64,000 bases of DNA from Carpediemonas membranifera BICM. Lineage: Eukaryota; Protista; Fornicata. This document shows, piece after piece, positions 37,781 to 64,000 of the stretch. The notes under the pieces were generated by a model. The model saw nothing but the letters and a program-made list of their open reading frames with translations, was not told the origin of the DNA and ran no database searches. The number at the start of each line of letters is the position of its first letter. Position 1 is the first letter of the stretch. The position numbers were made by a program, and so were the translations under genes. Location of the stretch: contig JAHDYR010000053.1 in assembly GCA_019828565.1 (NCBI GenBank), positions 716,172 to 780,171 on the forward strand, written 5' to 3'.

Positions 37781-37781
37781 G

Positions 37782-37857
37782 TGGTGCGACGGCCGAGACT
37801 CGAACTCGGGTCTCGAGAGCCACAATCTCGTGTCCTACCGCCTAGACTACCATCGCC
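37782..37857 (-). tRNA. tRNA-His(GTG) with genomic G-1 and genomic CCA
   Basis: G GCGATGG TA GTCT AGGCGGT AGGAC A CGAGA TT GTG GC TCTCG AGAC CCGAG TTCGAGT CTCGG CCGTCGC A CCA folds as a cloverleaf. Confidence 0.95.
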
Positions 37858-40800
37858 GTTTAATAGGTCGAAAACCTCCTTTCACGCTGCGTCCAGAGAC
37901 GTTCGCGCCTGTATTCCCGCGCCTGTGTCGACTTAGATGTGTCACCTGTGGGCATCCCTTGTTCGGCTCCTCCGGCTGCTCCCGCAGCCTCGTCGCCGGC
38001 CCCCTCGGCCTCTCCACACGCGAGATGAGATTCCAGCACAAATTATTCCCGCAGCCAGTCCTGCGCTGTGGCCCGCTCGAACTGCGTGACGTAATCCGAG
38101 TAGATCTGGACGTTGCCGTTCCAGATGCAGCGCATCACTTCCTGCTCCAGGAAGCGGCCGGCCCCCACACTCAGGCCGACCATCTTACACAATCTCACAC
38201 ACCAGGACTCGCCCTGGTCATCACTGCACGCTTCGCCAGTGATCTCGCAGGCGGCCGTCAGTAGCTCGGCTGACCAGTTGTGGTACTGCGCGGACTTGTC
38301 TGACTCGGCGTTGGCCTGATCCTTCGAGATCACCACGTCGATGATGATGGGCTCGTTGGCGACCCTGCCCGTGGGAGAGCGACGCAGCGGGACATAGACG
38401 TCGGCGCGAGCGTTACTCTGGTAGGCTGGGTCGGCCGAGTAGCCGCGGGTGCGACTGTTCAAGGCGAACTCCTTGCGGGCAAGCACGTCGTTACTCCACA
38501 GGAAGGAGCGCACGCAGTCACGAACTAGGTCATGACGCATGGTCCTGGCACCCTCCAGGAGCTTAGGACAGGACAACGTGTGCTGCCACGACACATTCGA
38601 GTTACCGCAGAGCGGGCAGCGGACGGTTGAGTCCGTCTCGAACGGTGGTGCGCCGAGGTGTGACCTCACCATGGTGGTGAAAAGGTCGCCACGGATCGGC
38701 GTCGCATAGGAGAGGGGGACAGGGCGGCTTCGGCCGCGAGAATCGGGGTCACCGGGGTCGACTCCACGATCGGGGCGACGGCTGCTGCATGGGCGCGAGA
38801 GATTTTTGTTAGGGTGCGCTGAAGGCCAGTCACGGGCTTGCCGTAGAGCTGGTCCATCCCACGAGGCCAGTCGATGGAGGTGTCGTTGGCGGCGAAGGTT
38901 GATTCGTCGGGGGTTCTGTCCCAGCCCACATCGTGCAGTTGGGCGGTTGCGGCTAGGTAAGCTGCGTCCCAGGTCATGCTCGGGGTGGGCAGGCGGAGGC
39001 CGTTATCGGAGAAATCGAGGCCGAGCCGGAGTGAGTTGTACTTCTCAGGGTCTAGGAGAAGAATTCTCGCAATCGCCGGCGTCAGGACGTTGGACTCGAA
39101 GTTTCGTATGGTCTCACGGTGTTGGGCTGGATCGATAGATCTCATCAAAAATGAAAGCTTCGGCAGAATACACGAACGGATAAGATTCAGAGCAACGGAC
39201 GTCCCATCCGTTCCAATGTCTTCAACCATCGACACCACACTAAGCAACATCTGTTTCTGCTCGTCTAGCTTCGTCATGAGCTGCATCCGTTCCGCTTCGA
39301 TGCCGCCAATGGGAATTCCCACGATTACTCCAGTTGGCGAGCACGTAACGCGAACAGTACGTGCATTCTGCGGCGCGGATGCACAAATCCACTGGCATTT
39401 AGCCGGTTTCATTGTTACGCCAATTTGTCGGAAAGCTTCACAAGCTCCATCGAAAAAAGCCCTGGATGGCGCCGCTAGTCGTCCCCGGGGGGCAATCCAT
39501 GTGACGTCGTCCTGGTAGGCAACCCACTCGCCGCCCCATTTCGTCTTCAGCGTGTCGATGATTGGCCGCATGGCCAGCGTGAACAGAATGGGGGACAGTG
39601 GGTCTCCTTGAGCGATGCCCTCTAGGGACTCGACGACGCGGCCGGACGGCAGAACCAGCCTTCCATTGCCATATACGGCGTCAAAGTACGGGATCGCAAC
39701 AGGGCAGGCCGCGGCGGCTGTGGACCTCAACAATTTGCGGGGCATGGTGCCGTACGCATTGCTGAGATCAACGGCGCAGATGCTTTGGCCACGGGAATAC
39801 GCTTCTTGCAGGCGCAGACCCATAACTTCTGTGCCGCACGACTCACCCCGCCCGTACTGATCATCGAGGAGAGGGTCATCCGCGAGGGACGCGGTAACCG
39901 CCTTGGCTAGTAGCTTGGCTGCTACTCGACGAAGGGCCTCTCCCATGGCGATGGGCCGGACCTCGTCGGGTTTGCCAGGCTTGGGCAGTGGGACGAGGCG
40001 GGAGTGGGCCAGAACGTTTGTGTACGGGACGCCTTCGGCCACATCGACAAGTAGTGGCTTCAGGGCAAGGGCGAAGGCTTCTGGCTTGTGTCTAGCGGCG
40101 AGCTTCAAGTGGAGGAAGCTCATGCCCGACGGACCGGGAGCCGAGTCGGCCGGAAGACTGCTCAGGACATCGATGATGTCCCGAGTTTCGAACTCTACCG
40201 AGGTGAGCGGGGCGAGGGGATGGCGGATTGGGAGGTCATCAAGACTGCCTTGGAAGGGGTCAGCTTGCATCCGAACCATCTTCTCCTCTGCTTCGGCTGG
40301 GGTCATCTGCAGTTCTTCCGAGACCAGGGCACTCATGGACTTGCTGTAGTACCCTCGTCTGGCGTGCTGGTAGGCGAGTCGGCTTCTCGACGTGCTTTCC
40401 ACCTGATTATGGCGGGTCCTCCGGGGGCGAAGTGCTGTTTGTGGGTGCAGCATCACGTCGATGAGACGATCGCGCTTGTCCTCATCTCTGGCTGCCGCGC
40501 AGGCGGTGACCTTTTCGATGAGGGCACGGACATAACCCTTGGTTCCCCTCCGCGTCGGTCGGCTGCGGCCGATGCGAGCCACGTCGGCGGGGTCTGGAAG
40601 GAACCCAAGAGGTCTTGTAGGCGCTCGGGTCTGCCTATTGTTGGTGGCCTGTGTTGCAGGGTGCGCCAATATAGCAGGGAGCGGCAGCCCCAGAGCGATG
40701 TGCGCTGCGGCCGCAACACGGCGTGAGCCATGTTTGGCCACAATCCCGTTCGACGGGAACCGGCGCGAGAAGTGGGGGGGCAGGGTTAGGCCGCCTGCGG

Positions 40801-41820
40801 CACGCAGGAGACACGTCTCAATCTCGATGGCTTGCGCCTTCGTGAGGTGCCTCCTGCGCTCCGTCCCCATGGCTCGCTCGAGCGCGGGGGGCGAGAGAAG
40901 CGTCTGGCGGACTGTGTCGGCATCACGCCAGAGCTCTTCCCGCAGGTCCGGGTGGATGGCGTCCCGTAGGTCACGAGCGAAGGCTGCGATAGCCTGGTTC
41001 ACTCGGACCGTTGGTACGTCCATCCCCCGGTGGTTGGTGTCAGCCACGCTTTGGCCGCCAGGCATGGGAGCGGGTGCCCCGTTATGTCTAGGCTGGACAT
41101 TCGTGGGCCGACTGGTCTCCTCGCTGTTGTTGGGTCTAGGCACGATGCCTGTCTCCTGTGACTGGGCGGGGGTGGGTGGTCCTGAGCCGAGAGGTGGACT
41201 TATCGGGGGTATAAGCTCCGCGATCATCATCTCCTCCCTCTCGATTTGCGTTCCTGATGTTTGTTGGGCTGACGCAACGGGTCCGTTGTCAATCTCATCG
41301 ATGGTGGAGAGCCGTGGGCATCCCGCCGCCCGTAGTTGCTCTAGTAGAGCCCTGCGGCGGCCTAGGGATAGTGTATGGTCACGGCCCTCTGTGTCTATAC
41401 GGATTCGCGAGTCCATTCGGTGCATCAGGAATTGGACGGGATGCGGCGGTAGGTTCCTGATCAACTGGATTGAGCTTAGTACTTGGTGTAATCTCTGCTT
41501 GAAGTCTCGGTTTGAGGGCCTCTGGATCACTGGGAAGAGCGGACTCACAGTGGCAATGAGTTCTTCGGAGACTCTCTTGGTGAAGCGCTCGGGACGTCCT
41601 CTATCTTGAATGAACAGCTTTTTCACAAGCTCTACATCGTTAAAGAGGCGGCGGACTTTCTGGTACGAGGACCAGTGTTCGGCAAAGAGAGATTTTGGTA
41701 CATGCTTACCAAACAGAATGCGCACGGCGTCGAAGATCTGGGAAACAGGATCTTCGAGCTGGATAGTTCCTTCAGTCCCGCTCAGAAGCCGCTCCACGAC
41801 TTCTTTGCTGACAAAGACTG
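37844..41820 (-). mobile_element. CRE-like RLE non-LTR retrotransposon, copy 1 (unit 3977 bp, includes the 14-nt tRNA junction)
   Basis: RT motifs SAPGPSG, RPIAMGEALRR, DLSNAY, GIAQGDPLSP, AYQDD. CCHC knuckle CPLC...HTLSC, RHD, RADV...IDV...DK..Y endonuclease. Abuts tRNA-His. Confidence 0.93.
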
Positions 41821-41830
41821 AGACTACCAT
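38043..41830 (-). CDS. Retrotransposon RT-ZnK-RLE polyprotein (one net frameshift in a C run near 38715)
   Basis: ORFs 38666-41830 and 38043-38672. Copy 3 has one extra G in this run and reads through in frame (LSPLSYATPIRGDLFTTMVRSH). Confidence 0.88.
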
Positions 41831-44800
41831 CGCCGTTTAATAGGTCGAAAACCTCCTTTCACGCTGCGTCCAGAGACGTTCGCGCCTGTATTCCCGCGCC
41901 TGTGTCGACTTAGATGTGTCACCTGTGGGCATCCCTTGTTCGGCTCCTCCGGCTGCTCCCGCAGCCTCGTCGCCGGCCCCCTCGGCCTCTCCACACGCGA
42001 GATGAGATTCCAGCACAAATTATTCCCGCAGCCAGTCCTGCGCTGTGGCCCGCTCGAACTGCGTGACGTAATCCGAGTAGATCTGGACGTTGCCGTTCCA
42101 GATGCAGCGCATCACTTCCTGCTCCAGGAAGCGGCCGGCCCCCACACTCAGGCCGACCATCTTACACAATCTCACACACCAGGACTCGCCCTGGTCATCA
42201 CTGCACGCTTCGCCAGTGATCTCGCAGGCGGCCGTCAGTAGCTCGGCTGACCAGTTGTGGTACTGCGCGGACTTGTCTGACTCGGCGTTGGCCTGATCCT
42301 TCGAGATCACCACGTCGATGATGATGGGCTCGTTGGCGACCCTGCCCGTGGGAGAGCGACGCAGCGGGACATAGACGTCGGCGCGAGCGTTACTCTGGTA
42401 GGCTGGGTCGGCCGAGTAGCCGCGGGTGCGACTGTTCAAGGCGAACTCCTTGCGGGCAAGCACGTCGTTACTCCACAGGAAGGAGCGCACGCAGTCACGA
42501 ACTAGGTCATGACGCATGGTCCTGGCACCCTCCAGGAGCTTAGGACAGGACAACGTGTGCTGCCACGACACATTCGAGTTACCGCAGAGCGGGCAGCGGA
42601 CGGTTGAGTCCGTCTCGAACGGTGGTGCGCCGAGGTGTGACCTCACCATGGTGGTGAAAAGGTCGCCACGGATCGGCGTCGCATAGGAGAGGGGGACAGG
42701 GCGGCTTCGGCCGCGAGAATCGGGGTCACCGGGGTCGACTCCACGATCGGGGCGACGGCTGCTGCATGGGCGCGAGAGATTTTTGTTAGGGTGCGCTGAA
42801 GGCCAGTCACGGGCTTGCCGTAGAGCTGGTCCATCCCACGAGGCCAGTCGATGGAGGTGTCGTTGGCGGCGAAGGTTGATTCGTCGGGGGTTCTGTCCCA
42901 GCCCACATCGTGCAGTTGGGCGGTTGCGGCTAGGTAAGCTGCGTCCCAGGTCATGCTCGGGGTGGGCAGGCGGAGGCCGTTATCGGAGAAATCGAGGCCG
43001 AGCCGGAGTGAGTTGTACTTCTCAGGGTCTAGGAGAAGAATTCTCGCAATCGCCGGCGTCAGGACGTTGGACTCGAAGTTTCGTATGGTCTCACGGTGTT
43101 GGGCTGGATCGACAGATCTCATCAAAAATGAAAGCTTCGGCAGAATACACGAACGGATAAGATTCAGAGCAACGGACGTCCCATCCGTTCCAATGTCTTC
43201 AACCATCGACACCACACTAAGCAACATCTGTTTCTGCTCGTCTAGCTTCGTCATGAGCTGCATCCGTTCCGCTTCGATGCCGCCAATGGGAATTCCCACG
43301 ATTACTCCAGTTGGCGAGCACGTAACGCGAACAGTACGTGCATTCTGCGGCGCGGATGCACAAATCCACTGGCATTTAGCCGGTTTCATTGTTACGCCAA
43401 TTTGTCGGAAAGCTTCACAAGCTCCATCGAAAAAGCCCTGGATGGCGCCGCTAGTCGTCCCCGGGGGGGCAATCCATGTGACGTCGTCCTGGTAGGCAAC
43501 CCACTCGCCGCCCCATTTCGTCTTCAGCGTGTCGATGATTGGCCGCATGGCCAGCGTGAACAGAATGGGGGACAGTGGGTCTCCTTGAGCGATGCCCTCT
43601 AGGGACTCGACGACGCGGCCGGACGGCAGAACCAGCCTTCCATTGCCATATACGGCGTCAAAGTACGGGATCGCAACAGGGCAGGCCGCGGCGGCTGTGG
43701 ACCTCAACAATTTGCGGGGCATGGTGCCGTACGCATTGCTGAGATCAACGGCGCAGATGCTTTGGCCACGGGAATACGCTTCTTGCAGGCGCAGACCCAT
43801 AACTTCTGTGCCGCACGACTCACCCCGCCCGTACTGGTCATCGAGGAGAGGGTCATCCGCGAGGGACGCGGTAACCGCCTTGGCTAGTAGCTTGGCTGCT
43901 ACTCGACGAAGGGCCTCTCCCATGGCGATGGGCCGGACCTCGTCGGGTTTGCCAGGCTTGGGCAGTGGGACGAGGCGGGAGTGGGCCAGAACGTTTGTGT
44001 ACGGGACGCCTTCGGCCACATCGACAAGTAGTGGCTTCAGGGCAAGGGCGAAGGCTTCTGGCTTGTGTCTAGCGGCGAGCTTCAAGTGGAGGAAGCTCAT
44101 GCCCGACGGACCGGGAGCCGAGTCGGCCGGAAGACTGCTCAGGACATCGATGATGTCCCGAGTTTCGAACTCTACCGAGGTGAGCGGGGCGAGGGGATGG
44201 CGGATTGGGAGGTCATCAAGACTGCCTTGGAAGGGGTCAGCTTGCATCCGAACCATCTTCTCCTCTGCTTCGGCTGGGGTCATCTGCAGTTCTTCCGAGA
44301 CCAGGGCACTCATGGACTTGCTGTAGTACCCTCGTCTGGCGTGCTGGTAGGCGAGTCGGCTTCTCGACGTGCTTCCCACCTGATTATGGCGGGTCCTCCG
44401 GGGGCGAAGTGCTGTTTGTGGGTGCAGCATCACGTCGATGAGACGATCGCGCTTGTCCTCATCTCTGGCTGCCGCGCAGGCGGTGACCTTTTCGATGAGG
44501 GCACGGACATAACCCTTGGTTCCCCTCCGCGTCGGTCGGCTGCGGCCGATGCGAGCCACGTCAGCGGGGTCTGGAAGGAACCCAAGAGGTCTTGTAGGCG
44601 CTCGGGTCTGCCTATTGTTGGTGGCCTGTGTTGCAGGGTGCGCCAATATAGCAGGGAGCGGCAGCCCCAGAGCGATGTGCGCTGCGGCCGCAACACGGCG
44701 TGAGCCATGTTTGGCCACAATCCCGTTCGACGGGAACCGGCGCGAGAAGTGGGGGGGCAGGGTTAGGCCGCCTGCGGCACGCAGGAGACACGTCTCAATC

Positions 44801-45798
44801 TCGATGGCTTGCGCCTTCGTGAGGTGCCTCCTGCGCTCCGTCCCCATGGCTCGCTCGAGCGCGGGGGGCGAGAGAAGCGTCTGGCGGACTGTGTCGGCAT
44901 CACGCCAGAGCTCTTCCCGCAGGTCCGGGTGGATGGCGTCCCGTAGGTCACGAGCGAAGGCTGCGATTGCCTGGTTCACTTGGACCGTTGGTACGTCCAT
45001 CCCCCGGTGGTTGGTGTCAGCCACGCTTTGGCCGCCAGGCATGGGAGCGGGTGCCCCGTTATGTCTAGGCTGGACATTCGTGGGCCGACTGGTCTCCCTC
45101 GCTGTCGGTAGGTCTAGGCACGATGCCTGTCTCCTGTGACTGGGCGGGGGTGGGTGGTCCTGAGCCGAGAGGTGGACTTATCGGGGGTATAAGCTCCGCG
45201 ATCATCATCTCCTCCCTCTCGATTTGCGTTCCTGATGTTTGGTGGGCTGACGCAACGGGTCCGTTGTCAATCTCATCGATGGTGGAGAGCCGTGGGCATC
45301 CCGCCGCCCGTAGTTGCTCTAGTAGAGCCCTGCGGCGGCCTAGGGATAGCGTATGGTCACGGCCCTCTGTGTCTATACGGATTCGCGAGTCCATTCGGTG
45401 CATCAGGAATTGGACGGGATGCGGCGGTAGGTTCCTGATCAACTGGATTGAGCTTAGTACTTGGTGTAATCTCTGCTTGAAGTCTCGGTTTGAGGGCCTC
45501 TGGATCACTGGGAAGAGCGGACTCACAGTGGCAATGAGTTCTTCGGAAACTCTCTTGGTGAAGCGCTCGGGACGTCCTCTATCTTGAATGAACAGCTTTT
45601 TCACAAGCTCTACATCGTTAAAGAGGCGGCGGACTTTCTGGTACGAGGACCAGTGTTCGGCAAAGAGAGATTTTGGTACATGCTTACCAAACAGAATGCG
45701 CACGGCGTCGAAGATCTGGGAAACAGGATCTTCGAGCTGGATAGTTCCTTCAGTCCCGCTCAGAAGCCGCTCCACGACTTCTTTGCTGACAAAGACTG
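41821..45798 (-). mobile_element. CRE-like retrotransposon, copy 2
   Basis: Near-identical tandem copy starting at junction agactaccatcgcc. Confidence 0.93.
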
Positions 45799-46582
45799 AG
45801 ACTACCATCGCCGTTTAATAGGTCGAAAACCTCCTTTCACGCTGCGTCCAGAGACGTTCGCGCCTGTATTCCCGCGCCTGTGTCGACTTAGATGTGTCAC
45901 CTGTGGGCATCCCTTGTTCGGCTCCTCCGGCTGCTCCCGCAGCCTCGTCGCCGGCCCCCTCGGCCTTTCCACACGCGAGATGAGATTCCAGCACAAATTA
46001 TTCCCGCAGCCAGTCCTGCGCTGTGGCCCGCTCGAACTGCGTGACGTAATCCGAGTAGATCTGGACGTTGCCGTTCCAGATGCAGCGCATCACTTCCTGC
46101 TCCAGGAAGCGGCCGGCCCCCACACTCAGGCCGACCATCTTACACAATCTCACACACCAGGACTCGCCCTGGTCATCACTGCACGCTTCGCCAGTGATCT
46201 CGCAGGCGGCCGTCAGTAGCTCGGCTGACCAGTTGTGGTACTGCGCGGACTTGTCTGACTCGGCGTTGGCCTGATCCTTCGAGATCACCACGTCGATGAT
46301 GATGGGCTCGTTGGCGACCCTGCCCGTGGGAGAGCGACGCAGCGGGACATAGACGTCGGCGCGAGCGTTACTCTGGTAGGCTGGGTCGGCCGAGTAGCCG
46401 CGGGTGCGACTGTTCAAGGCGAACTCCTTGCGGGCAAGCACGTCGTTACTCCACAGGAAGGAGCGCACGCAGTCACGAACTAGGTCATGACGCATGGTCC
46501 TGGCACCCTCCAGGAGCTTAGGACAGGACAACGTGTGCTGCCACGACACATTCGAGTTACCGCAGAGCGGGCAGCGGACGGT

Positions 46583-46600
46583 TGAGTCCGTCTCGAACGG
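46583..46600 (+). repeat. 18-bp target site duplication of the nested LINE (other copy 53841-53858)
   Basis: Exact duplication of a sequence present once in the uninterrupted copies. Confidence 0.95.
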
Positions 46601-46992
46601 AGAAAGAAAAGAAAGAAATTTATGGTGCTTGGATTCTGACCCCGGACTGAGCTTGTTTCCCGTTGTCTTGGAGCTGAGTGCCCCGGGGTACTGCCTATTT
46701 CCCGTGGCAAACTGGTCAGCAGCGTTTGCCTTGGGCTTTCGGTGCTACTGTCTCCGCGGAAAGCCGATTCCAATCGCCCCAGAGGCCCTGCGGCCATCTC
46801 CGTGCAAATATGCTTTCCTGTCTCCCTGAAAGTCCGGCAACTATCCGGGGAGCCTGGGGGTCTGTCCTCGGGGCATTGACAGGCAGGATCGTCCTGCAGG
46901 ACCTTGACTATGACACTCCTTGCTTCCCTGCAGTCCTTGTAGAGCCGTTCAGCCACGGCACCCTCTCGTCTGTCCGGTTCCCCAATTCCATG
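46601..46992 (-). CDS. Possible small ORF3 at the LINE 3' end
   Basis: Open frame ERLYKDCREARSVIVKVLQDDPACQC... downstream of ORF2, after a GC-rich spacer. Tentative. Confidence 0.3.
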
Positions 46993-47288
46993 CCCCCTCG
47001 ACTCTGTTAAGAAGCCTACCCGAAGGCGGGGAAAGTGACTAAGTCCATGCTGTCTACCCCGGTTAGGTGGCGTGGGTCAGGGCATGGGTGGTGTACCCCC
47101 AGGCACTAGGCCTGGTTGTCCTGTTACCCCTTACAACATTTCGCTTGCACTACATGTCCTTGGTTTCCCATGTCGTTAACAAGGGCGGCAGGGGCACCTG
47201 TGCCCCTCCGACCCCCGTGGCCAGTCCCTGCAGTTTCCTTGGGGTCCCAACGAGTGGTGCAACCATATGAATATGGATTTCCTTGACC

Positions 47289-53839: not shown

Positions 53840-56800
53840 CTGAGTCCGTCTCGAACGGTGGTGCGCCGAGGTGTGACCTCACCATGGTGGTGAAAAGGTC
53901 GCCACGGATCGGCGTCGCATAGGAGAGGGGGGACAGGGCGGCTTCGGCCGCGAGAATCGGGGTCACCGGGGTCGACTCCACGATCGGGGCGACGGCTGCT
54001 GCATGGGCGCGAGAGATTTTTGTTAGGGTGCGCTGAAGGCCAGTCACGGGCTTGCCGTAGAGCTGGTCCATCCCACGAGGCCAGTCGATGGAGGTGTCGT
54101 TGGCGGCGAAGGTTGATTCGTCGGGGGTTCTGTCCCAGCCCACATCGTGCAGTTGGGCGGTTGCGGCTAGGTAAGCTGCGTCCCAGGTCATGCTCGGGGT
54201 GGGCAGGCGGAGGCCGTTATCGGAGAAATCGAGGCCGAGCCGGAGTGAGTTGTACTTCTCAGGGTCTAGGAGAAGAATTCTCGCAATCGCCGGCGTCAGG
54301 ACGTTGGACTCGAAGTTTCGTATGGTCTCACGGTGTTGGGCTGGATCGACAGATCTCATCAAAAATGAAAGCTTCGGCAGAATACACGAACGGATAAGAT
54401 TCAGAGCAACGGACGTCCCATCCGTTCCAATGTCTTCAACCATCGACACCACACTAAGCAACATCTGTTTCTGCTCGTCTAGCTTCGTCATGAGCTGCAT
54501 CCGTTCCGCTTCGATGCCGCCAATGGGAATTCCCACGATTACTCCAGTTGGCGAGCACGTAACGCGAACAGTACGTGCATTCTGCGGCGCGGATGCACAA
54601 ATCCACTGGCATTTAGCCGGTTTCATTGTTACGCCAATTTGTCGGAAAGCTTCACAAGCTCCATCGAAAAAGCCCTGGATGGCGCCGCTAGTCGTCCCCG
54701 GGGGGCAATCCATGTGACGTCGTCCTGGTAGGCAACCCACTCGCCGCCCCATTTCGTCTTCAGCGTGTCGATGATTGGCCGCATGGCCAGCGTGAACAGA
54801 ATGGGGGACAGTGGGTCTCCTTGAGCGATGCCCTCTAGGGACTCGACGACGCGGCCGGACGGCAGAACCAGCCTTCCATTGCCATATACGGCGTCAAAGT
54901 ACGGGATCGCAACAGGGCAGGCCGCGGCGGCTGTGGACCTCAACAATTTGCGGGGCATGGTGCCGTACGCATTGCTGAGATCAACGGCGCAGATGCTTTG
55001 GCCACGGGAATACGCTTCTTGCAGGCGCAGACCCATAACTTCTGTGCCGCACGACTCACCCCGCCCGTACTGGTCATCGAGGAGAGGGTCATCCGCGAGG
55101 GACGCGGTAACCGCCTTGGCTAGTAGCTTGGCTGCTACTCGACGAAGGGCCTCTCCCATGGCGATGGGCCGGACCTCGTCGGGTTTGCCAGGCTTGGGCA
55201 GTGGGACGAGGCGGGAGTGGGCCAGAACGTTTGTGTACGGGACGCCTTCGGCCACATCGACAAGTAGTGGCTTCAGGGCAAGGGCGAAGGCTTCTGGCTT
55301 GTGTCTAGCGGCGAGCTTCAAGTGGAGGAAGCTCATGCCCGACGGACCGGGAGCCGAGTCGGCCGGAAGACTGCTCAGGACATCGATGATGTCCCGAGTT
55401 TCGAACTCTACCGAGGTGAGCGGGGCGAGGGGATGGCGGATTGGGAGGTCATCAAGACTGCCTTGGAAGGGGTCAGCTTGCATCCGAACCATCTTCTCCT
55501 CTGCTTCGGCTGGGGTCATCTGCAGTTCTTCCGAGACCAGGGCACTCATGGACTTGCTGTAGTACCCTCGTCTGGCGTGCTGGTAGGCGAGTCGGCTTCT
55601 CGACGTGCTTCCCACCTGATTATGGCGGGTCCTCCGGGGGCGAAGTGCTGTTTGTGGGTGCAGCATCACGTCGATGAGACGATCGCGCTTGTCTTCATCT
55701 CTGGCTGCCGCGCAGGCGGTGACCTTTCCGATGAGGGCACGGACATAACCCTTGGTTCCCCTCCGCGTCGGTCGGCTGCGGCCGATGCGAGCCACGTCGG
55801 CGGGGTCTGGAAGGAACCCAAGAGGTCTTGTAGGCGCTCGGGTCTGCCTATTGTTGGTGGCCTGTGTTGCAGGGTGCGCCAATATAGCAGGGAGCGGCAG
55901 CCCCAGAGCGATGTGCGCTGCGGCCGCAACACGGCGTGAGCCATGTTTGGCCACAATCCCGTTCGACGGGAACCGGCGCGAGAAGTGGGGGGGCAGGGTT
56001 AGGCCGCCTGCGGCACGCAGGAGACACGTCTCAATCTCGATGGCTTGCGCCTTCGTGAGGTGCCTCCTGCGCTCCGTCCCCATGGCTCGCTCGAGCGCGG
56101 GGGGCGAGAGAAGCGTCTGGCGGACTGTGTCGGCATCACGCCAGAGCTCTTCCCGCAGGTCCGGGTGGATGGCGTCCCGTAGGTCACGAGCGAAGGCTGC
56201 GATAGCCTGGTTCACTCGGACCGTTGGTACGTCCATCCCCCGGTGGTTGGTGTCAGCCACGCTTTGGCCGCCAGGCATGGGGAGCGGGTGCCCCGTTATG
56301 TCTAGGCTGGACATTCGTGGGCCGACTGGTCTCCCTCGCTGTCGTTAGGTCTAGGCACGATGCCTGTCTCCTGTGACTGGGCGGGGGTGGGTGGTCCTGA
56401 GCCGAGAGGTGGACTTATCGGGGGTATAAGCTCCGCGATCATCATCTCCTCCCTCTCGATTTGCGTTCCTGATGTTTGGTGGGCTGACGCAACGGGTCCG
56501 TTGTCAATCTCATCGATGGTGGAGAGCCGTGGGCATCCCGCCGCCCGTAGTTGCTCTAGTAGAGCCCTGCGGCGGCCTAGGGATAGCGTATGGTCACGGC
56601 CCTCTGTGTCTATACGGATTCGCGAGTCCATTCGGTGCATCAGGAATTGGACGGGATGCGGCGGTAGGTTCCTGATCAACTGGATTGAGCTTAGTACTTG
56701 GTGTAATCTCTGCTTGAAGTCTCGGTTTGAGGGCCTCTGGATCACTGGGAAGAGCGGACTCACAGTGGCAATGAGTTCTTCGGAGACTCTCTTGGTGAAG

Positions 56801-57036
56801 CGCTCGGGACGTCCTCTATCTTGAATGAACAGCTTTTTCACAAGCTCTACATCGTTATAGAGGCGGCGGACTTTCTGGTACGAGGACCAGTGTTCGGCAA
56901 AGAGAGATTTTTGGTACATGCTTACCAAACAGAATGCGCACGGCGTCGAAGATCTGGGAAACAGGATCTTCGAGCTGGATAGTTCCTTCAGTCCCGCTCA
57001 GAAGCCGCTCCACGACTTCTTTGCTGACAAAGACTG

Positions 57037-60000
57037 AGACTACCATCGCCGTTTAATAGGTCGAAAACCTCCTTTCACGCTGCGTCCAGAGACGTTCGCG
57101 CCTGTATTCCCGCGCCTGTGTCGACTTAGATGTGTCACCTGTGGGCATCCCTTGTTCGGCTCCTCCGGCTGCTCCCGCAGCCTCGTCGCCGGCCCCCTCG
57201 GCCTTTCCACACGCGAGATGAGATTCCAGCACAAATTATTCCCGCAGCCAGTCCTGCGCTGTGGCCCGCTCGAACTGCGTGACGTAATCCGAGTAGATCT
57301 GGACGTTGCCGTTCCAGATGCAGCGCATCACTTCCTGCTCCAGGAAGCGGCCGGCCCCCACACTCAGGCCGACCATCTTACACAATCTCACACACCAGGA
57401 CTCGCCCTGGTCATCACTGCACGCTTCGCCAGTGATCTCGCAGGCGGCCGTCAGTAGCTCGGCTGACCAGTTGTGGTACTGCGCGGACTTGTCTGACTCG
57501 GCGTTGGCCTGATCCTTCGAGATCACCACGTCGATGATGATGGGCTCGTTGGCGACCCTGCCCGTGGGAGAGCGACGCAGCGGGACATAGACGTCGGCGC
57601 GAGCGTTACTCTGGTAGGCTGGGTCGGCCGAGTAGCCGCGGGTGCGACTGTTCAAGGCGAACTCCTTGCGGGCAAGCACGTCGTTACTCCACAGGAAGGA
57701 GCGCACGCAGTCACGAACTAGGTCATGACGCATGGTCCTGGCACCCTCCAGGAGCTTAGGACAGGACAACGTGTGCTGCCACGACACATTCGAGTTACCG
57801 CAGAGCGGGCAGCGGACGGTTGAGTCCGTCTCGAACGGTGGTGCGCCGAGGTGTGACCTCACCATGGTGGTGAAAAGGTCGCCACGGATCGGCGTCGCAT
57901 AGGAGAGGGGGACAGGGCGGCTTCGGCCGCGAGAATCGGGGTCACCGGGGTCGACTCCACGATCGGGGCGACGGCTGCTGCATGGGCGCGAGAGATTTTT
58001 GTTAGGGTGCGCTGAAGGCCAGTCACGGGCTTGCCGTAGAGCTGGTCCATCCCACGAGGCCAGTCGATGGAGGTGTCGTTGGCGGCGAAGGTTGATTCGT
58101 CGGGGGTTCTGTCCCAGCCCACATCGTGCAGTTGGGCGGTTGCGGCTAGGTAAGCTGCGTCCCAGGTCATGCTCGGGGTGGGCAGGCGGAGGCCGTTATC
58201 GGAGAAATCGAGGCCGAGCCGGAGTGAGTTGTACTTCTCAGGGTCTAGGAGAAGAATTCTCGCAATCGCCGGCGTCAGGACGTTGGACTCGAAGTTTCGT
58301 ATGGTCTCACGGTGTTGGGCTGGATCGACAGATCTCATCAAAAATGAAAGCTTCGGCAGAATACACGAACGGATAAGATTCAGAGCAACGGACGTCCCAT
58401 CCGTTCCAATGTCTTCAACCATCGACACCACACTAAGCAACATCTGTTTCTGCTCGTCTAGCTTCGTCATGAGCTGCATCCGTTCCGCTTCGATGCCGCC
58501 AATGGGAATTCCCACGATTACTCCAGTTGGCGAGCACGTAACGCGAACAGTACGTGCATTCTGCGGCGCGGATGCACAAATCCACTGGCATTTAGCCGGT
58601 TTCATTGTTACGCCAATTTGTCGGAAAGCTTCACAAGCTCCATCGAAAAAGCCCTGGATGGCGCCGCTAGTCGTCCCCGGGGGGGCAATCCATGTGACGT
58701 CGTCCTGGTAGGCAACCCACTCGCCGCCCCATTTCGTCTTCAGCGTGTCGATGATTGGCCGCATGGCCAGCGTGAACAGAATGGGGGACAGTGGGTCTCC
58801 TTGAGCGATGCCCTCTAGGGACTCGACGACGCGGCCGGACGGCAGAACCAGCCTTCCATTGCCATATACGGCGTCAAAGTACGGGATCGCAACAGGGCAG
58901 GCCGCGGCGGCTGTGGACCTCAACAATTTGCGGGGCATGGTGCCGTACGCATTGCTGAGATCAACGGCGCAGATGCTTTGGCCACGGGAATACGCTTCTT
59001 GCAGGCGCAGACCCATAACTTCTGTGCCGCACGACTCACCCCGCCCGTACTGGTCATCGAGGAGAGGGTCATCCGCGAGGGACGCGGTAACCGCCTTGGC
59101 TAGTAGCTTGGCTGCTACTCGACGAAGGGCCTCTCCCATGGCGATGGGCCGGACCTCGTCGGGTTTGCCAGGCTTGGGCAGTGGGACGAGGCGGGAGTGG
59201 GCCAGAACGTTTGTGTACGGGACGCCTTCGGCCACATCGACAAGTAGTGGCTTCAGGGCAAGGGCGAAGGCTTCTGGCTTGTGTCTAGCGGCGAGCTTCA
59301 AGTGGAGGAAGCTCATGCCCGACGGACCGGGAGCCGAGTCGGCCGGAAGACTGCTCAGGACATCGATGATGTCCCGAGTTTCGAACTCTACCGAGGTGAG
59401 CGGGGCGAGGGGATGGCGGATTGGGAGGTCATCAAGACTGCCTTGGAAGGGGTCAGCTTGCATCCGAACCATCTTCTCCTCTGCTTCGGCTGGGGTCATC
59501 TGCAGTTCTTCCGAGACCAGGGCACTCATGGACTTGCTGTAGTACCCTCGTCTGGCGTGCTGGTAGGCGAGTCGGCTTCTCGACGTGCTTCCCACCTGAT
59601 TATGGCGGGTCCTCCGGGGGGCGAAGTGCTGTTTGTGGGTGCAGCATCACGTCGATGAGACGATCGCGCTTGTCCTCATCTCTGGCTGCCGCGCAGGCGG
59701 TGACCTTTCCGATGAGGGCACGGACATAACCCTTGGTTCCCCTCCGCGTCGGTCGGCTGCGGCCGATGCGAGCCACGTCGGCGGGGTCTGGAAGGAACCC
59801 AAGAGGTCTTGTAGGCGCTCGGGTCTGCCTATTGTTGGTGGCCTGTGTTGCAGGGTGCGCCAATATAGCAGGGAGCGGCAGCCCCAGAGCGATGTGCGCT
59901 GCGGCCGCAACACGGCGTGAGCCATGTTTGGCCACAATCCCGTTCGACGGGAACCGGCGCGAGAAGTGGGGGGGCAGGGTTAGGCCGCCTGCGGCACGCA

Positions 60001-61017
60001 GGAGACACGTCTCAATCTCGATGGCTTGCGCCTTCGTGAGGTGCCTCCTGCGCTCCGTCCCCATGGCTCGCTCGAGCGCGGGGGGGCGAGAAGCGTCTGG
60101 CGGACTGTGTCGGCATCACGCCAGAGCTCTTCCCGCAGGTCCGGGTGGATGGCGTCCCGTAGGTCACGAGCGAAGGCTGCGATAGCCTGGTTCACTCGGA
60201 CCGTTGGTACGTCCATCCCCCGGTGGTTGGTGTCAGCCACGCTTTGGCCGCCAGGCATGGGAGCGGGTGCCTCGTTATGTCTAGGCTGGACATTCGTGGG
60301 CCGACTGGTCTCCCTCGCTGTCGTTAGGTCTAGGCACGATGCCTGTCTCCTGTGACTGGGCGGGGGTGGGTGGTCCTGAGCCGAGAGGTGGACTTATCGG
60401 GGGGTATAAGCTCCGCGATCATCATCTCCTCCCTCTCGATTTGCGTTCCTGATGTTTGGTGGGCTGACGCAACGGGTCCGTTGTCAATCTCATCGATGGT
60501 GGAGAGCCGTGGGCATCCCGCCGCCCGTAGTTGCTCTAGTAGAGCCCTGCGGCGGCCTAGGGATAGCGTATGGTCACGGCCCTCTGTGTCTATACGGATT
60601 CGCGAGTCCATTCGGTGCATCAGGAATTGGACGGGATGCGGCGGTAGGTTCCTGATCAACTGGATTGAGCTTAGTACTTGGTGTAATCTCTGCTTGAAGT
60701 CTCGGTTTGAGGGCCTCTGGATCACTGGGAAGAGCGGACTCACAGTGGCAATGAGTTCTTCGGAGACTCTCTTGGTGAAGCGCTCGGGACGTCCTCTATC
60801 TTGAATGAACAGCTTTTTTTCACAAGCTCTACATCGTTAAAGAGGCGGCGGACTTTCTGGTACGAGGACCAGTGTTCGGCAAAGAGAGATTTTGGTACAT
60901 GCTTACCAAACAGAATGCGCACGGCGTCGAAGATCTGGGAAACAGGATCTTCGAGCTGGATAGTTCCTTCAGTCCCGCTCAGAAGCCGCTCCACGACTTC
61001 TTTGCTGACAAAGACTG
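57037..61017 (-). mobile_element. CRE-like retrotransposon, copy 4
   Basis: Near-identical tandem copy with the same junctions. Confidence 0.93.
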
Positions 61018-64000
61018 AGACTACCATCGCCGTTTAATAGGTCGAAAACCTCCTTTCACGCTGCGTCCAGAGACGTTCGCGCCTGTATTCCCGCGCCTGT
61101 GTCGACTTAGATGTGTCACCTGTGGGCATCCCTTGTTCGGCTCCTCCGGCTGCTCCCGCAGCCTCGTCGCCGGCCCCCCTCGGCCTCTCCACACGCGAGA
61201 TGAGATTCCAGCACAAATTATTCCCGCAGCCAGTCCTGCGCTGTGGCCCGCTCGAACTGCGTGACGTAATCCGAGTAGATCTGGACGTTGCCGTTCCAGA
61301 TGCAGCGCATCACTTCCTGCTCCAGGAAGCGGCCGGCCCCACACTCAGGCCGACCATCTTACACAATCTCACACACCAGGACTCGCCCTGGTCATCACTG
61401 CACGCTTCGCCAGTGATCTCGCAGGCGGCCGTCAGTAGCTCGGCTGACCAGTTGTGGTACTGCGCGGACTTGTCTGACTCGGCGTTGGCCTGATCCTTCG
61501 AGATCACCACGTCGATGATGATGGGCTCGTTGGCGACCCTGCCCGTGGGAGAGCGACGCAGCGGGACATAGACGTCGGCGCGAGCGTTACTCTGGTAGGC
61601 TGGGTCGGCCGAGTAGCCGCGGGTGCGACTGTTCAAGGCGAACTCCTTGCGGGCAAGCACGTCGTTACTCCACAGGAAGGAGCGCACGCAGTCACGAACT
61701 AGGTCATGACGCATGGTCCTGGCACCCTCCAGGAGCTTAGGACAGGACAACGTGTGCTGCCACGACACATTCGAGTTACCGCAGAGCGGGCAGCGGACGG
61801 TTGAGTCCGTCTCGAACGGTGGTGCGCCGAGGTGTGACCTCACCATGGTGGTGAAAAAGGTCGCCACGGATCGGCGTCGCATAGGAGAGGGGGACAGGGC
61901 GGCTTCGGCCGCGAGAATCAGGGTCACCGGGGTCGACTCCACGATCGGGGCGACGGCTGCTGCATGGGCGCGAGATTTTTTTGTTAGGGTGCGCTGAAGG
62001 CCAGTCACGGGCTTGCCGTAGAGCTGGTCCATCCCACGAGGCCAGTCGATGGAGGTGTCGTTGGCGGCGAAGGTTGATTCGTCGGGGGTTCTGTCCCAGC
62101 CCACATCGTGCAGTTGGGCGGTTGCGGCTAGGTAAGCTGCGTCCCAGGTCATGCTCGGGGTGGGCAGGCGGAGAGCCGTTATCGGAGAAATCGAGGCCGA
62201 GCCGGAGTGAGTTGTACTTCTCAGGGTCTAGGAGAAGAATTCTCGCAATCGCCGGCGTCAGGACGTTGGACTCGAAGTTTCGTATGGTCTCACGGTGTTG
62301 GGCTGGATCGATAGATCTCATCAAAAAAATGAAAGCTTCGGCAGAATACACGAACGGATAAGATTCAGAGCAACGGACGTCCCATCCGTTCCAATGTCTT
62401 CAACCATCGACACCACACTAAGCAACATCTGTTTCTGCTCGTCTAGCTTCGTCATGAGCTGCATCCGTTCCGCTTCGATGCCGCCAATGGGAATTCCCAC
62501 GATTACTCCAGTTGGCGAGCACGTAACGCGAACAGTACGTGCATTCTGCGGCGCGGATGCACAAATCCACTGGCATTTAGCCGGTTTCATTGTTACGCCA
62601 ATTTGTCGGAAAGCTTCACAAGCTCCATCGAAAAAGCCCTGGATGGCGCCGCTAGTCGTCCCCGGGGGGGCAATCCATGTGACGTCGTCCTGGTAGGCAA
62701 CCCACTCGCCGCCCCATTTCGTCTTCAGCGTGTCGATGATTGGCCGCATGGCCAGCGTGAACAGAATGGGGGACAGTGGGTCTCCTTGAGCGATGCCCTC
62801 TAGGGACTCGACGACGCGGCCGGACGGCAGAACCAGCCTTCCATTGCCATATACGGCGTCAAAGTACGGGATCGCAACAGGGCAGGCCGCGGCGGCTGTG
62901 GACCTCAACAATTTGCGGGGGCATGGTGCCGTACGCATTGCTGAGATCAACGGCGCAGATGCTTTGGCCACGGGAATACGCTTCTTGCAGGCGCAGACCC
63001 ATAACTTCTGTGCCGCACGACTCACCCCGCCCGTACTGGTCATCGAGGAGAGGGTCATCCGCGAGGGACGCGGTAACCGCCTTGGCTAGTAGCTTGGCTG
63101 CTACTCGACGAAGGGCCTCTCCCATGGCGATGGGCCGGACCTCGTCGGGTTTGCCAGGCTTGGGCAGTGGGACGAGGCGGGGAGTGGGCCAGAACGTTTG
63201 TGTACGGGACGCCTTCGGCCACATCGACAAGTAGTGGCTTCAGGGCAAGGGCGAAGGCTTCTGGCTTGTGTCTGGCGGCGAGCTTCAAGTGGAGGAAGCT
63301 CATGCCCGACGGACCGGGAGCCGAGTCGGCCGGAAGACTGCTCAGGACATCGATGATGTCCCGAGTTTCGAACTCTACCGAGGTGAGGCGGGGCGAGGGG
63401 ATGGCGGATTGGGGAGGTCATCAAGACTGCCTTGGAAGGGGTCAGCTTGCATCCGAACCATCTTCTCCTCTGCTTCGGCTGGGGTCATCTGCAGTTCTTC
63501 CGAGACCAGGGCACTCATGGACTTGCTGTAGTACCCTCGTCTGGCGTGCTGGTAGGCGAGTCGGCTTCTCGACGTGCTTCCCACCTGATTATGGCGGGTC
63601 CTCCGGGGGCGAAGTGCTGTTTGTGGGTGCAGCATCACGTCGATGAGACGATCGCGCTTGTCCTCATCTCTGGCTGCCGCGCAGGTGGTGACCTTTCCGA
63701 TGAGGGCACGGACATAACCCTTGGTTCCCCTCCGCGTCGGTCGGCTGCGGCCGATGCGAGCCACGTCAGCGGGGTCTGGAAGGAACCCAAGAGGTCTTGT
63801 AGGCGCTCGGGTCTGCCTATTGTTGGTGGCCTGTGTTGCAGGGTGCGCCAATATAGCAGGGAGCGGCAGCCCCAAACGATGTGCGCTGCGGCCGCAACAC
63901 GGCGTGAGCCATGTTTAGCCACAATCCCGTTCGACGGGAACCGGCGCGAGAAGTGGGGGGGCAGGGTTAGGCCGCCTGCGGCACGCAGGAGGCACGTCTC
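61018..64000 (-). mobile_element. CRE-like retrotransposon, copy 5 (runs off the window)
   Basis: Same sequence with more homopolymer indels. Confidence 0.92.

What the first reader, a model, noticed from the sequence alone, without database searches (positions are those of the whole stretch)
37782..64000. tRNA-His-targeting RLE retrotransposon that builds a head-to-tail array while leaving the tRNA gene intact
Seen: five ~3.98-kb near-identical elements on the tRNA strand. Each junction (37844, 41821, 45799, 57037, 61018) contains GGCGATGGTAGTCT, the first 14 nt (G-1 to the D stem) of the tRNA-His, and the last junction continues into a complete tRNA gene. Known: the RT motifs (RPIAMGEALRR, QGDPLSP, YQDD) and the CCHC + RHD + PD-D/ExK-type endonuclease match CRE/SLACS-type site-specific elements. 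Those usually target spliced-leader genes or telomeric/simple repeats and make long TSDs. Inference: this element nicks at the tRNA 5' end and duplicates at least 14 bp. The internal Pol III promoter is regenerated after every insertion, so the site can be reused indefinitely. A compact tRNA-specific CRE-like integrator would be an unusual target class and a candidate genome-writing tool.
Basis: partly seen in the sequence, partly recalled or inferred. Interest (0 to 1): 0.92.

Follow-up and report, generated by a model that had tools for sequence, protein, structure and literature searches.

The report
tRNA-His-specific retrotransposon arrays in Carpediemonas
A 4-kb jumping gene of the protist Carpediemonas membranifera sits directly in front of every intact histidine-tRNA gene found in the genome, in head-to-tail rows that leave the tRNA gene whole; this is a new family with a new twist, but retrotransposons of this kind that target tRNA genes were already known.

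Summary
Five exact copies of GGCGATGGTAGTCT (G-1 to U13 of tRNA-His) lie at the stated places, separating 3,977-bp units on the tRNA strand. The last one runs into an intact tRNA-His(GTG).

Three amendments:
- Copy 3 is split by a 7.2-kb unrelated LINE.
- Copy 5 ends at a 100-N scaffold gap.
- Most differences between copies are homopolymer-length differences.

The genome holds 26 exact 14-mers: 22 start an element, 3 start the only intact tRNA-His genes (all three occupied), and 1 is neither.

The protein is a reverse transcriptase followed by a CCHC knuckle and an R2-like restriction-type nuclease.

A 14-bp target duplication is not shown. ORF1's ATG lies inside the 14-mer, so the 14-mer must be in the mRNA. 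The only array end in single-copy DNA is a 5'-truncated copy with no 14-mer.

tRNA-targeting elements of this class (NeSL-1_TV, LIN15_SM, LIN25_SM) and R1 tandems separated by target duplications are already published. CRE/SLACS membership was not testable here.

Other first-stage readers of this scan noted the same element on other pieces of this genome (s1-520487, s1-536170).

Verdict: a real, site-specific, probably recently active element; a new variant of a known kind; moderate interest.

The parts
37782..37857 (-). Intact tRNA-His(GTG) gene with genome-encoded G-1 (37857) and CCA (37782-37784), followed by TTTT. It is the 3' anchor of the array.
   Evidence: ARAGORN; Rfam RF00005, 62.9 bits over model 1-71; sequence.
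37858..41834 (-). Copy 1, the tRNA-proximal full-length unit (3,977 bp). It starts with the 14-mer at 41834..41821 and ends ...CCTATTAAAC at 37858.
38666..41830 (-). ORF1 of copy 1, 1054 aa. The ATG is A4-U5-G6 of the tRNA-derived 14-mer. The RT domain is at aa 616-816 (about 39383-39985). The N-terminal 400 aa have no recognisable domain.
38043..38672 (-). ORF2 of copy 1, 209 aa: CCHC knuckle plus restriction-like endonuclease (RHD, E68, R89-A-D91, D112). It lies in the -1 frame and overlaps the ORF1 stop (ATGGTGA).
38714..38718 (-). C5 homopolymer where the homology to relatives moves from the ORF1 frame to the ORF2 frame. The same run is C6 in copy 3 (53927-53932). With C6, RT and nuclease read as one ORF, as they do in the relatives.
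41835..45812 (-). Copy 2, full length, with the 14-mer at 45812..45799.
45813..46600 (-). Copy 3, 3' part (unit 3190-3977).
46601..53840 (-). Unrelated 7,240-bp high-copy LINE-like insertion inside copy 3. It has an 18-bp target duplication and a (TTTCT)n tail. It is not part of the element.
53841..57050 (-). Copy 3, 5' part (unit 1-3207), with the 14-mer at 57050..57037.
57051..61031 (-). Copy 4, full length, with the 14-mer at 61031..61018.
61032..64000 (-). Copy 5, unit 1016-3977 only. It is cut by the window end, which coincides with a 100-N scaffold gap. It carries many private indels, so the consensus here is probably of low quality.

Best explanation
This is a 3,977-bp non-LTR retrotransposon of the restriction-like-endonuclease (RLE) group in Carpediemonas membranifera. 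Its protein runs: unknown N-terminal region, reverse transcriptase, CCHC knuckle, PD-(D/E)xK nuclease. This is probably one ORF.

Shown:
- Its 3' end (...CCTATTAAAC) abuts G-1 of every intact tRNA-His(GTG) gene found, in the tRNA's orientation.
- Each full-length copy begins with a 14-nt copy of G-1..U13.
- That 14-mer holds the first ATG of the ORF, with a stop codon 9 nt upstream.
- The tRNA downstream is complete.

Inferred:
- The nuclease nicks the tRNA template strand between -2 and -1, and reverse transcription is primed there.
- Because the ATG is in the 14-mer, the mRNA (which is also the template) starts at or before it and carries it along.
- At the 5' junction, the cDNA end complementary to G-1..U13 can pair with the same 14 nt of the target's upper strand. 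This is the route proposed for R2 RNAs that keep 28S sequence at their 5' end (from my own knowledge of the R2 literature, not checked here). The result looks like a 14-bp duplication whether or not the upper strand is cut 14 bp downstream.
- Each new insertion next to the intact tRNA pushes older copies upstream, which builds head-to-tail arrays. Unequal exchange may add copies.
For: Census of exact matches in the genome:
- 26 copies of the 14-mer, against 0 in the reversed control. Of these, 22 are followed by the element's 5' end, 3 by tRNA-His and 1 by neither.
- 24 element 3' ends. Of these, 20 are followed by 14-mer plus element, 3 by tRNA-His and 1 by a foreign 4.4-kb insert.

The tRNA-His loci on C39, C6 and C7 have different 3' flanks.

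Protein: RVT_1. Weak matches to R2 and LINE-1 ORF2 among solved structures. The ORF2 model (pLDDT 79) has R2 proteins as its top six PDB matches. The CCHC, RHD, E, RxD and D columns are invariant across relatives.

Start codon: the ATG lies in the 14-mer, with an in-frame TAA upstream at all four array junctions in the window.

Recent activity: copies differ by 0-18 substitutions per 3.9 kb.

Growth at the tRNA end: the tRNA-proximal copies of two different arrays (C39a_1 and C6_1) share 6 substitutions that their neighbours lack. The most distal C6 copy has the most private changes and carries a DNA-transposon insertion.

A 5'-truncated terminal copy (unit 3621-3977) lies next to single-copy DNA without the 14-mer. 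This is what an element-borne 14-mer predicts.
Against: - No empty tRNA-His site exists in this genome, so the native upstream flank and the exact cut sites cannot be read.
- The missing 14-mer at the truncated end could also be a target deletion at a 5' junction.
- The evidence for growth at the tRNA end rests on two arrays. If insertion could occur at any junction, the same pattern would arise by chance roughly 1 time in 15. Gene conversion could also mimic it.
- No RNA data were available, so the transcript's start and end are unknown.
- ORF1 and ORF2 are out of frame in 14 of 17 copies. If that is real, most copies need frameshifting or are dead. It may equally be homopolymer error.
- Copy numbers are uncertain. 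There is a scaffold gap inside the array, and both of its sides look poorly polished.
Confidence: 0.7

Rival explanations
1. The element RNA lacks the 14-mer. The nuclease makes staggered cuts, the lower strand at -2/-1 and the upper strand between U13 and A14. Repair duplicates 14 bp, which restores the tRNA after every insertion.
For: All 22 full-length 5' ends carry exactly the same 14 nt as the tRNA, and every 3' end abuts G-1. R1 arrays with target duplications between copies are a precedent (bioRxiv 10.1101/158386). Utopia families make duplications of 0 to 20 bp (PMC4640811).
Against: The first ATG of the ORF is inside the 14-mer, and a TAA lies 9 nt upstream. An RNA without the 14-mer would therefore lack the start codon, and the next in-frame ATG is at codon 136. 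The only array end in unique DNA, a 5'-truncated copy, has no 14-mer. The two apparent distal ends with a 14-mer next to foreign flank turned out to be LTR-type retroelement insertions, not native flank.
Confidence: 0.2
2. Arrays are mainly products of unequal crossing-over or segmental duplication after one or two insertions per locus, as proposed for the Drosophila R1 array. On this view there was no series of independent retrotranspositions.
For: Copies C39b_2, b_3 and b_4 differ by 0-1 substitutions, and one variant (alignment column 3847) is confined to C39 copies. The R1 precedent is in bioRxiv 10.1101/158386.
Against: Neighbouring copies often differ more from each other than from copies on other contigs. 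C39a_1 differs from C39a_2 by 12 substitutions but from C6_1 by only 5. The same variant type occupies the tRNA-proximal place in two arrays. The two processes do not exclude each other.
Confidence: 0.25
3. Self-targeting. The nuclease recognises the 14-mer itself, so new copies enter in front of any element head as well as in front of the tRNA, and arrays grow at any junction.
For: The sequence from -10 to +13 is identical at tRNA junctions and at internal junctions. A related family in the same genome also forms arrays, with a 4.57-kb period, where no tRNA was seen.
Against: The shared young variant type is at the tRNA-proximal position in both arrays where it occurs. This is weak evidence, from two arrays only.
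Confidence: 0.2
4. Assembly artefact. One or two copies per locus were expanded by a long-read assembler into arrays.
For: There is a 100-N gap inside the array. The 860 nt after the gap repeat the tRNA and its 3' flank at 88% identity with 55 gap positions. Copy 5 next to the gap is error-rich. Homopolymer indels are frequent throughout.
Against: Arrays occur in at least six places on five contigs. Copies carry copy-specific substitutions and different nested insertions: a LINE in C39a_3, a mini-LTR element in C39b_5, and DNA transposons in the C6/C44 and C42 copies. These anchor the copies as distinct.
Confidence: 0.07

Closest known systems
tRNA-gene-specific NeSL-related RLE LINEs: NeSL-1_TV (tRNA-Pro, Trichomonas vaginalis), LIN15_SM (tRNA-Arg) and LIN25_SM (tRNA-Glu) of planaria (Kojima & Jurka 2015, PMC4640811)
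   Same: RT followed by a zinc knuckle and a restriction-like nuclease. Precise 3' junction with one kind of tRNA gene. NeSL-1_TV also comes from a metamonad.
   Different: In the junctions readable in that paper's S6 Fig, LIN15_SM sits inside the tRNA-Arg body and LIN25_SM a few nt into tRNA-Glu, so the gene copy is broken. Here the junction is at G-1 and the gene is whole. The target is tRNA-His. The start codon lies in tRNA-derived sequence. Phylogenetic relatedness was not tested.
CRE clade (SLACS, CZAR, CRE1, CRE2) of trypanosomatids
   Same: RLE LINEs inserted at one fixed position near the 5' end of a small-RNA gene (the spliced-leader gene), with target duplications (PMC12278014). One Carpediemonas paralogue was auto-named 'SLACS' by its depositors.
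   Different: According to PMC12278014, CRE elements generally end in poly-A and mostly carry zinc-finger motifs. This element ends ...TTAAAC, and Pfam finds no zinc finger. The target differs. The RT phylogeny was not done.
R1 tandem array of Drosophila melanogaster, and TE 'double insertion' (McGurk & Barbash, bioRxiv 10.1101/158386)
   Same: Head-to-tail copies of a site-specific LINE separated by a short piece of the target (33 nt of rDNA). The explanation offered is repeated insertion at a regenerated site plus unequal exchange.
   Different: R1 carries an AP-type nuclease and disrupts 28S genes. Here the spacer holds the element's start codon and the target gene stays functional.
R2 (structures 9nl3, 9dou, 8gh6)
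   Same: Nearest solved relatives: the RT matches by sequence at E 4e-5, and the CCHC plus RLE domain matches by fold. R2 inserts by target-primed reverse transcription at one site. Some R2 RNAs keep target sequence at the 5' end, which helps 5' joining (my own knowledge of the literature, not checked here).
   Different: No N-terminal zinc-finger or Myb domain detected. No ribozyme found by Rfam. The target is a tRNA gene edge rather than 28S.
Giardia GilM/GilT (Arkhipova & Morrison 2001; summarised in PMC10999387)
   Same: RLE-type LINEs of a related protist lineage (Fornicata). As I remember it, they are arranged in head-to-tail arrays.
   Different: They are telomere-associated, not tRNA-associated. 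The original paper could not be read here, so the array detail rests on memory.

Membership tests
RLE-bearing non-LTR retrotransposons (the CRE/R2 groups in the broad sense) | Reverse transcriptase of the LINE type | tested here: met
   Pfam RVT_1 at E 1.7e-12, 47.9 bits against a cut-off of 29.6. The best solved relatives are R2 and LINE-1 ORF2.
RLE-bearing non-LTR retrotransposons (the CRE/R2 groups in the broad sense) | CCHC knuckle and PD-(D/E)xK restriction-like nuclease C-terminal to the RT | tested here: met
   C19, C22, H31 and C35 of ORF2 (H31 and C35 invariant across the relatives aligned); R46, H47, E68, R89, D91, D112 and Y130 invariant across relatives. The AlphaFold model has pLDDT 79, and its top six PDB matches are all R2 proteins (E 6e-6 to 7e-4).
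RLE-bearing non-LTR retrotransposons (the CRE/R2 groups in the broad sense) | No terminal repeats; 5' truncation of some copies; precise 3' junction | tested here: met
   The 24 exact 3' ends have only three kinds of downstream partner. One genuine 5'-truncated copy lies next to unique DNA. All other apparent truncations are interruptions by other transposons.
RLE-bearing non-LTR retrotransposons (the CRE/R2 groups in the broad sense) | Integration by target-primed reverse transcription | not testable with these tools
   Needs biochemistry.
CRE clade (SLACS/CZAR/CRE1/CRE2) | RT groups with the CRE clade in a phylogeny | not tested
   No labelled reference sequences could be obtained. Protein searches returned only unnamed or Carpediemonas proteins.
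CRE clade (SLACS/CZAR/CRE1/CRE2) | Insertion in spliced-leader RNA genes; poly-A tail (PMC12278014) | tested here: not met
   The target is tRNA-His, and the 3' end is ...CCTATTAAAC with no A tail.
NeSL clade, including the tRNA-specific NeSL-1_TV | RT groups with NeSL; N-terminal zinc fingers, with a Ulp1 protease in some members | tested here: inconclusive
   Pfam finds nothing but RVT_1 in ORF1. The model of the N-terminal 420 aa is unusable at pLDDT 40. No phylogeny was done.
R2 clade | 28S rDNA target; N-terminal zinc-finger and Myb DNA-binding domains; 5' HDV-like ribozyme | tested here: not met
   The target is tRNA-His. Pfam finds no zinc-finger or Myb domain. Rfam finds no ribozyme in the unit at E up to 1.
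Target-specific LINE for tRNA-His | All copies with an intact 3' end abut the same target sequence, at independent loci | tested here: met
   Of 24 exact 3' ends, 23 are followed by the 14-mer (3 as tRNA-His, 20 as the head of the next copy). The 24th is followed by a 4.4-kb foreign insert. Three loci have different tRNA 3' flanks.

The most novel reading that the evidence does not exclude
The element and the tRNA-His genes are functionally interlocked.
- The AT-rich 3' end of one copy (TATTAAAC) plus the tRNA-derived 14-mer would form the promoter, start site and start codon of the next copy, so the element would be expressed only from arrays or from the tRNA edge.
- Read-through transcripts of the tRNA-proximal copy would be cut by RNase P at G-1, giving the poly-A-less RNA its exact 3' end.
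- Every tRNA-His gene of the cell would depend on upstream sequence supplied by the element, in a genome where no Thg1 was found and G-1 is DNA-encoded.
- Two different LTR-type retroelements inserted 1 nt upstream of the 14-mer hint that this junction is a marked site, possibly a transcription start.
Probability: 0.15. Interest if true: 0.75.

Novelty: new variant of a known kind. Interest (0 to 1): 0.55.

Why it matters
It adds tRNA-His, and a new host lineage (free-living Fornicata), to the short list of tRNA-gene-specific RLE retrotransposons.

It is the clearest case I could find in which such an element:
- leaves its target gene whole,
- occupies every intact copy of that gene found in the genome, and
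- takes its own start codon from target-derived sequence.

That makes three questions testable:
- How do RLE LINEs form precise 5' junctions: by a staggered cut, or by RNA-borne target homology?
- How do site-specific LINEs become tandem arrays?
- How does a cell tolerate having all genes of one tRNA species flanked by a transposon?

R2-type proteins are already being used for site-specific transgene insertion (PRINT, PMC11371274). A roughly 1,260-aa enzyme that homes to a tRNA gene edge without destroying the gene is therefore a reasonable candidate to characterise. Its activity and target recognition are entirely untested.

Tried and rejected
- RT clade placement. No named CRE, NeSL, R2, Genie or GilM references could be obtained, so no phylogeny was built.
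- N-terminal domain. Pfam finds nothing, the protein-atlas features score at most 0.83, and the AlphaFold model of aa 1-420 has pLDDT 40. Target recognition remains unexplained.
- Ribozymes or other RNA families in the unit. Rfam finds only the tRNA. The 3' UTR fold has z = -1.6, which is not significant.
- Reads. No Carpediemonas run is served. Two runs hold about 6% of the sampled words as short contigs, one of them a microbial-mat metagenome with 100% identical pieces of ORF2. Nothing covers a junction, and there is no RNA. Copy number and transcript ends are therefore unverified.
- tRNA association of relatives. No tRNA or other Rfam gene was found on 7 contigs encoding relatives, and no tRNA on 36 further metagenome contigs. 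Most contigs are short, so this is weak evidence that tRNA targeting is confined to this family.
- Distal ends on C24 and C44. I first took these (14-mer next to foreign DNA) as native flanks supporting a duplication. I rejected that when the flanks proved to be a multi-copy LTR-type retroelement and a 36%-identical relative of it.
- Host promoter motif upstream of ATGs in the window. No consensus is visible, so the promoter idea stays speculative.
- More genome sequence. The ends of the related family B, the C7 and C24 arrays, and C8:291007 could not be read. I did not try to read them by other means.
- The Arkhipova & Morrison 2001 paper is not held.

Full report
WHAT IS THERE. The window is G000:C39:716172-780171 of a 24.2-Mb, 69-contig assembly. 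Near-identical proteins are deposited as Carpediemonas membranifera (KAG93... entries), which agrees with earlier notes of this scan.

On the minus strand lies a tRNA-His(GTG) gene at 37782-37856. Rfam scores it 62.9 bits over the full model. It has G at -1, an encoded CCA and a TTTT terminator.

Directly upstream of the tRNA, on the same strand, are units of 3,977 bp. Each begins with GGCGATGGTAGTCT (G-1 to U13 of the tRNA) and ends ...CCTATTAAAC. About 0.01 matches are expected by chance.

- Copy 3 is split by a 7,240-bp unrelated element. It has at least 40 near-identical copies in the genome, an 18-bp target duplication and a (TTTCT)n tail.
- Copy 5 is cut by the window end, which coincides with a 100-N scaffold gap.

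GENOME-WIDE CENSUS. The exact 14-mer occurs 26 times, against 0 for the reversed control.

- 22 are followed by the element's 5' end.
- 3 are followed by the rest of tRNA-His: C39 (this window), C6:1271523 and C7:399780.
- 1, at C8:291007, is followed by neither.

A BLAST search with the tRNA found only these three genes plus a degenerate fourth just beyond the gap on C39. So every intact tRNA-His gene that I could find is occupied. No empty site exists.

The 17-nt 3' end occurs 24 times.

- 20 are followed by 14-mer plus element.
- 3 are followed by tRNA-His.
- 1, at C44:19182, is followed by a 4.4-kb foreign insert.

The C6 and C7 tRNA genes have 3' flanks unrelated to the C39 flank, so these are independent loci.

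Arrays or pieces of arrays lie on C39 (two), C6, C7, C24 (two), C42 and C44 (two).

Most apparent truncations are interruptions by other transposons.

- The C44 copy ends at unit 2851 and the C6 copy starts at unit 2849. Each is flanked by one end of a CATACTGT-type terminal-inverted-repeat transposon, so they read as two halves of one copy with a 3-bp duplication.
- The C42 pieces are bounded in the same way.
- C39b copy 5 holds a 12.4-kb element with 67-nt LTRs and a CCCTG duplication.

THE PROTEIN. ORF1 (1054 aa) has RVT_1 at residues 616-816. Its nearest solved relatives are R2 (E 4e-5) and LINE-1 ORF2.

ORF2 (209 aa) carries C-x2-C...H-x3-C, RHD, E, R-A-D and D. The catalytic residues and the H and last C of the knuckle are invariant in an alignment with relatives. 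Its model (pLDDT 79) has the R2 proteins of zebra finch, turtle and silkworm as its six best PDB matches. The element therefore belongs to the RLE group of LINEs.

The closest relatives outside this genome are P0004 and P0005, at 33-36% identity. Both are single ORFs of 1100-1141 aa in which the nuclease is fused to the RT.

In this element, homology to those relatives passes from the ORF1 frame to the ORF2 frame at a run of C (window 38714-38718). The run is C5 in 14 copies and C6 in 3 (C39a_3, C39b_4, C6_3b). With C6 the two ORFs form one. C39b_4, however, also carries an extra T in the next run downstream, so its frame is broken again.

Of 34 indel columns among copies, 30 are homopolymer-length differences. 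I therefore cannot say whether the split is real, or whether it is a consensus error in a repeat that short reads cannot polish.

The first 400 residues match nothing. How the target is recognised remains unknown.

IS THE 14-MER A TARGET DUPLICATION? Three observations bear on the difference.

First, ORF1's first ATG is A4-U5-G6 of the 14-mer. A TAA lies in frame 9 nt upstream at all four array junctions in the window. The next in-frame ATG is at codon 136. So the mRNA must contain at least most of the 14-mer. In LINEs the mRNA is the template, so a full-length cDNA carries the 14-mer whatever the nuclease does to the upper strand. This is an inference from sequence; no RNA data exist.

Second, the only array end that adjoins single-copy DNA (C39:813771) is a 5'-truncated copy (unit 3621-3977), and no 14-mer precedes it. 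An RNA-borne head predicts exactly this. A true duplication predicts a 14-mer there, unless the 5' junction deleted target sequence. From memory, such deletions are common for truncated R2 copies.

Third, two ends that at first looked like '14-mer next to native flank' (C24:340885 and C44:14785) are not native. The C24 flank is a retroelement with at least 10 copies at about 100% identity (9 of full length). It has an LTR-type RT and a 139-nt terminal repeat that starts 1 nt from the 14-mer. The C44 flank encodes a 36%-identical relative in the same position and orientation, and another element 3' end lies 4.4 kb further up.

I therefore favour an RNA-borne head that also serves as homology for 5' joining. 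Whether an upper-strand cut 14 bp downstream exists is left open.

HOW THE ARRAYS GROW. Copies differ by 0-18 substitutions per 3.9 kb, so amplification is recent or the copies are homogenised.

- The tRNA-proximal copies of the C39 and C6 arrays share six substitutions that their neighbours lack. They differ from each other by 5 substitutions but from their own neighbours by 10-12.
- The most distal C6 copy has the most private changes and a DNA-transposon insertion.
- This fits repeated insertion next to the intact tRNA from changing source variants. It rests on two arrays only. If insertion could occur at any junction, the pattern would arise by chance roughly 1 time in 15. Gene conversion could mimic it.
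- Three adjacent C39b copies are identical or differ by one substitution. Unequal exchange, or bursts from one source, probably contribute.

ASSEMBLY CAVEATS. The 860 nt after the gap repeat the tRNA and its 3' flank at 88% identity with 55 gap positions. The tRNA there is scrambled in the D arm. Copy 5 on the near side of the gap is error-rich. The two C39 arrays may be one locus assembled twice, two haplotypes, or a true duplication. They do differ in nested insertions. Copy numbers should be taken as approximate. No Carpediemonas sequencing run was available to check them.

COMPARISON WITH WHAT IS KNOWN.
- RLE LINEs specific for tRNA genes are published: NeSL-1_TV (tRNA-Pro, Trichomonas), LIN15_SM (tRNA-Arg) and LIN25_SM (tRNA-Glu) (PMC4640811). 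In the readable junctions those elements sit inside the tRNA body.
- Head-to-tail arrays of a site-specific LINE with target sequence between copies are known for R1 (bioRxiv 10.1101/158386). Utopia is occasionally tandem in U2 genes.
- CRE-clade elements insert at a fixed place in spliced-leader genes and generally end in poly-A (PMC12278014). This element has no A tail and a different target. Its RT clade could not be determined here.
- A related family in the same genome (40% amino-acid identity, at least 37 copies, fused RT-nuclease) also forms arrays, with a 4.57-kb period, but its ends could not be read.
- None of 43 contigs encoding more distant relatives carries a tRNA.

VERDICT. The site-specific tRNA-His RLE element is real and probably recently active. 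The specific claim of a target duplication of at least 14 bp is unproven and, on balance, disfavoured as the sole source of the 14-mer. The claims of a new target class and of CRE membership are not upheld. What is new is the particular design:
- insertion exactly at G-1,
- the target gene kept whole,
- every intact tRNA-His gene found occupied, and
- the start codon lying in tRNA-derived sequence.

I rate it a new variant of a known kind, with interest 0.55.

Noticed in passing
window 46601-53840: A 7,240-bp LINE-like element is inserted in copy 3, in the same orientation. It has an 18-bp target duplication (CCGTTCGAGACGGACTCA) and a (TTTCT)n 3' tail. Both its ends have at least 40 copies at 99-100% identity across the genome, so it is a very young high-copy family.
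   Followed up: partly
C39 just beyond the window (joined coordinates 64001-64950; locus L031): A 100-N scaffold gap lies exactly at the window end. After it come 830 nt that repeat window 37060-37861 (the tRNA-His and its 3' flank) at 88% identity with 55 gap positions, including a tRNA-His with a scrambled D arm. A second array of six copies follows.
   Followed up: partly
L043:2887-4806 (C24:340886 onward) and L035:8787-10000 (C44:14786 onward): Two different LTR-type retroelements sit with their 5' end 1 nt upstream of the 14-mer, both pointing away from it. One has at least 10 copies at about 100% identity (9 of full length), a Ty3/retrovirus-like RT and a 139-nt terminal repeat. The other is only 36% identical in protein. 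The same site and orientation twice suggests that they target this junction or the tRNA 5' edge, as yeast Ty3 targets Pol III start sites.
   Followed up: partly
L032:6400-6440, L035:5900-5940, L034:6140-6170 and 10205-10260: DNA transposons with CATACTGT-type inverted ends have hit the element at unit positions 1738-1740, 1802-1804 and 2849-2851. The last has a 3-bp duplication (ACC). One such insertion appears to link contigs C44 and C6.
   Followed up: partly
C39 joined coordinates 83741-96188 (loci L041, L036): A 12.4-kb insertion bounded by 67-nt LTRs (TGTAGTG...CCACA), with a 5-bp duplication CCCTG, lies inside copy 5 of the second C39 array.
   Followed up: no
whole genome G000: A six-frame search finds no match to Thg1 (PF04446), the enzyme that adds G-1 to tRNA-His in most eukaryotes. 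All three intact tRNA-His genes encode G at -1, and the two whose 3' ends were read (C39 and C6) also encode CCA. The G-1 may therefore be kept from the primary transcript, as in bacteria.
   Followed up: partly
L017-L030; C65:576-634 kb, C6:1745-1779 kb, C11, C52, C15, C43: A related RLE LINE family has at least 37 copies, 40% amino-acid identity in the RT, and RT and nuclease in one frame. One subfamily is spaced every 4.57 kb on C65, and several copies lie at contig starts. It may form arrays at another target or near chromosome ends.
   Followed up: partly
L050 (PPCM01001310.1 of GCA_002919055.1): The closest foreign relative (P0004, 36% identity) lies on an 11,945-bp contig whose first and last 87 nt are identical. 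That implies a tandem or circular 11,858-bp unit. The unit also holds a Ty3-like element with 73-nt LTRs and an RT gene with a weak Dam methyltransferase hit.
   Followed up: no
window 38170-38473: A 2018 microbial-mat metagenome run holds two contigs 100% identical to part of ORF2. This organism or a very close strain therefore occurs in that sample.
   Followed up: no
G000:C8:291007-291020: A lone exact 14-mer is followed neither by tRNA-His nor by the element, and no element 3' end precedes it. About 0.2 such matches are expected by chance.
   Followed up: no
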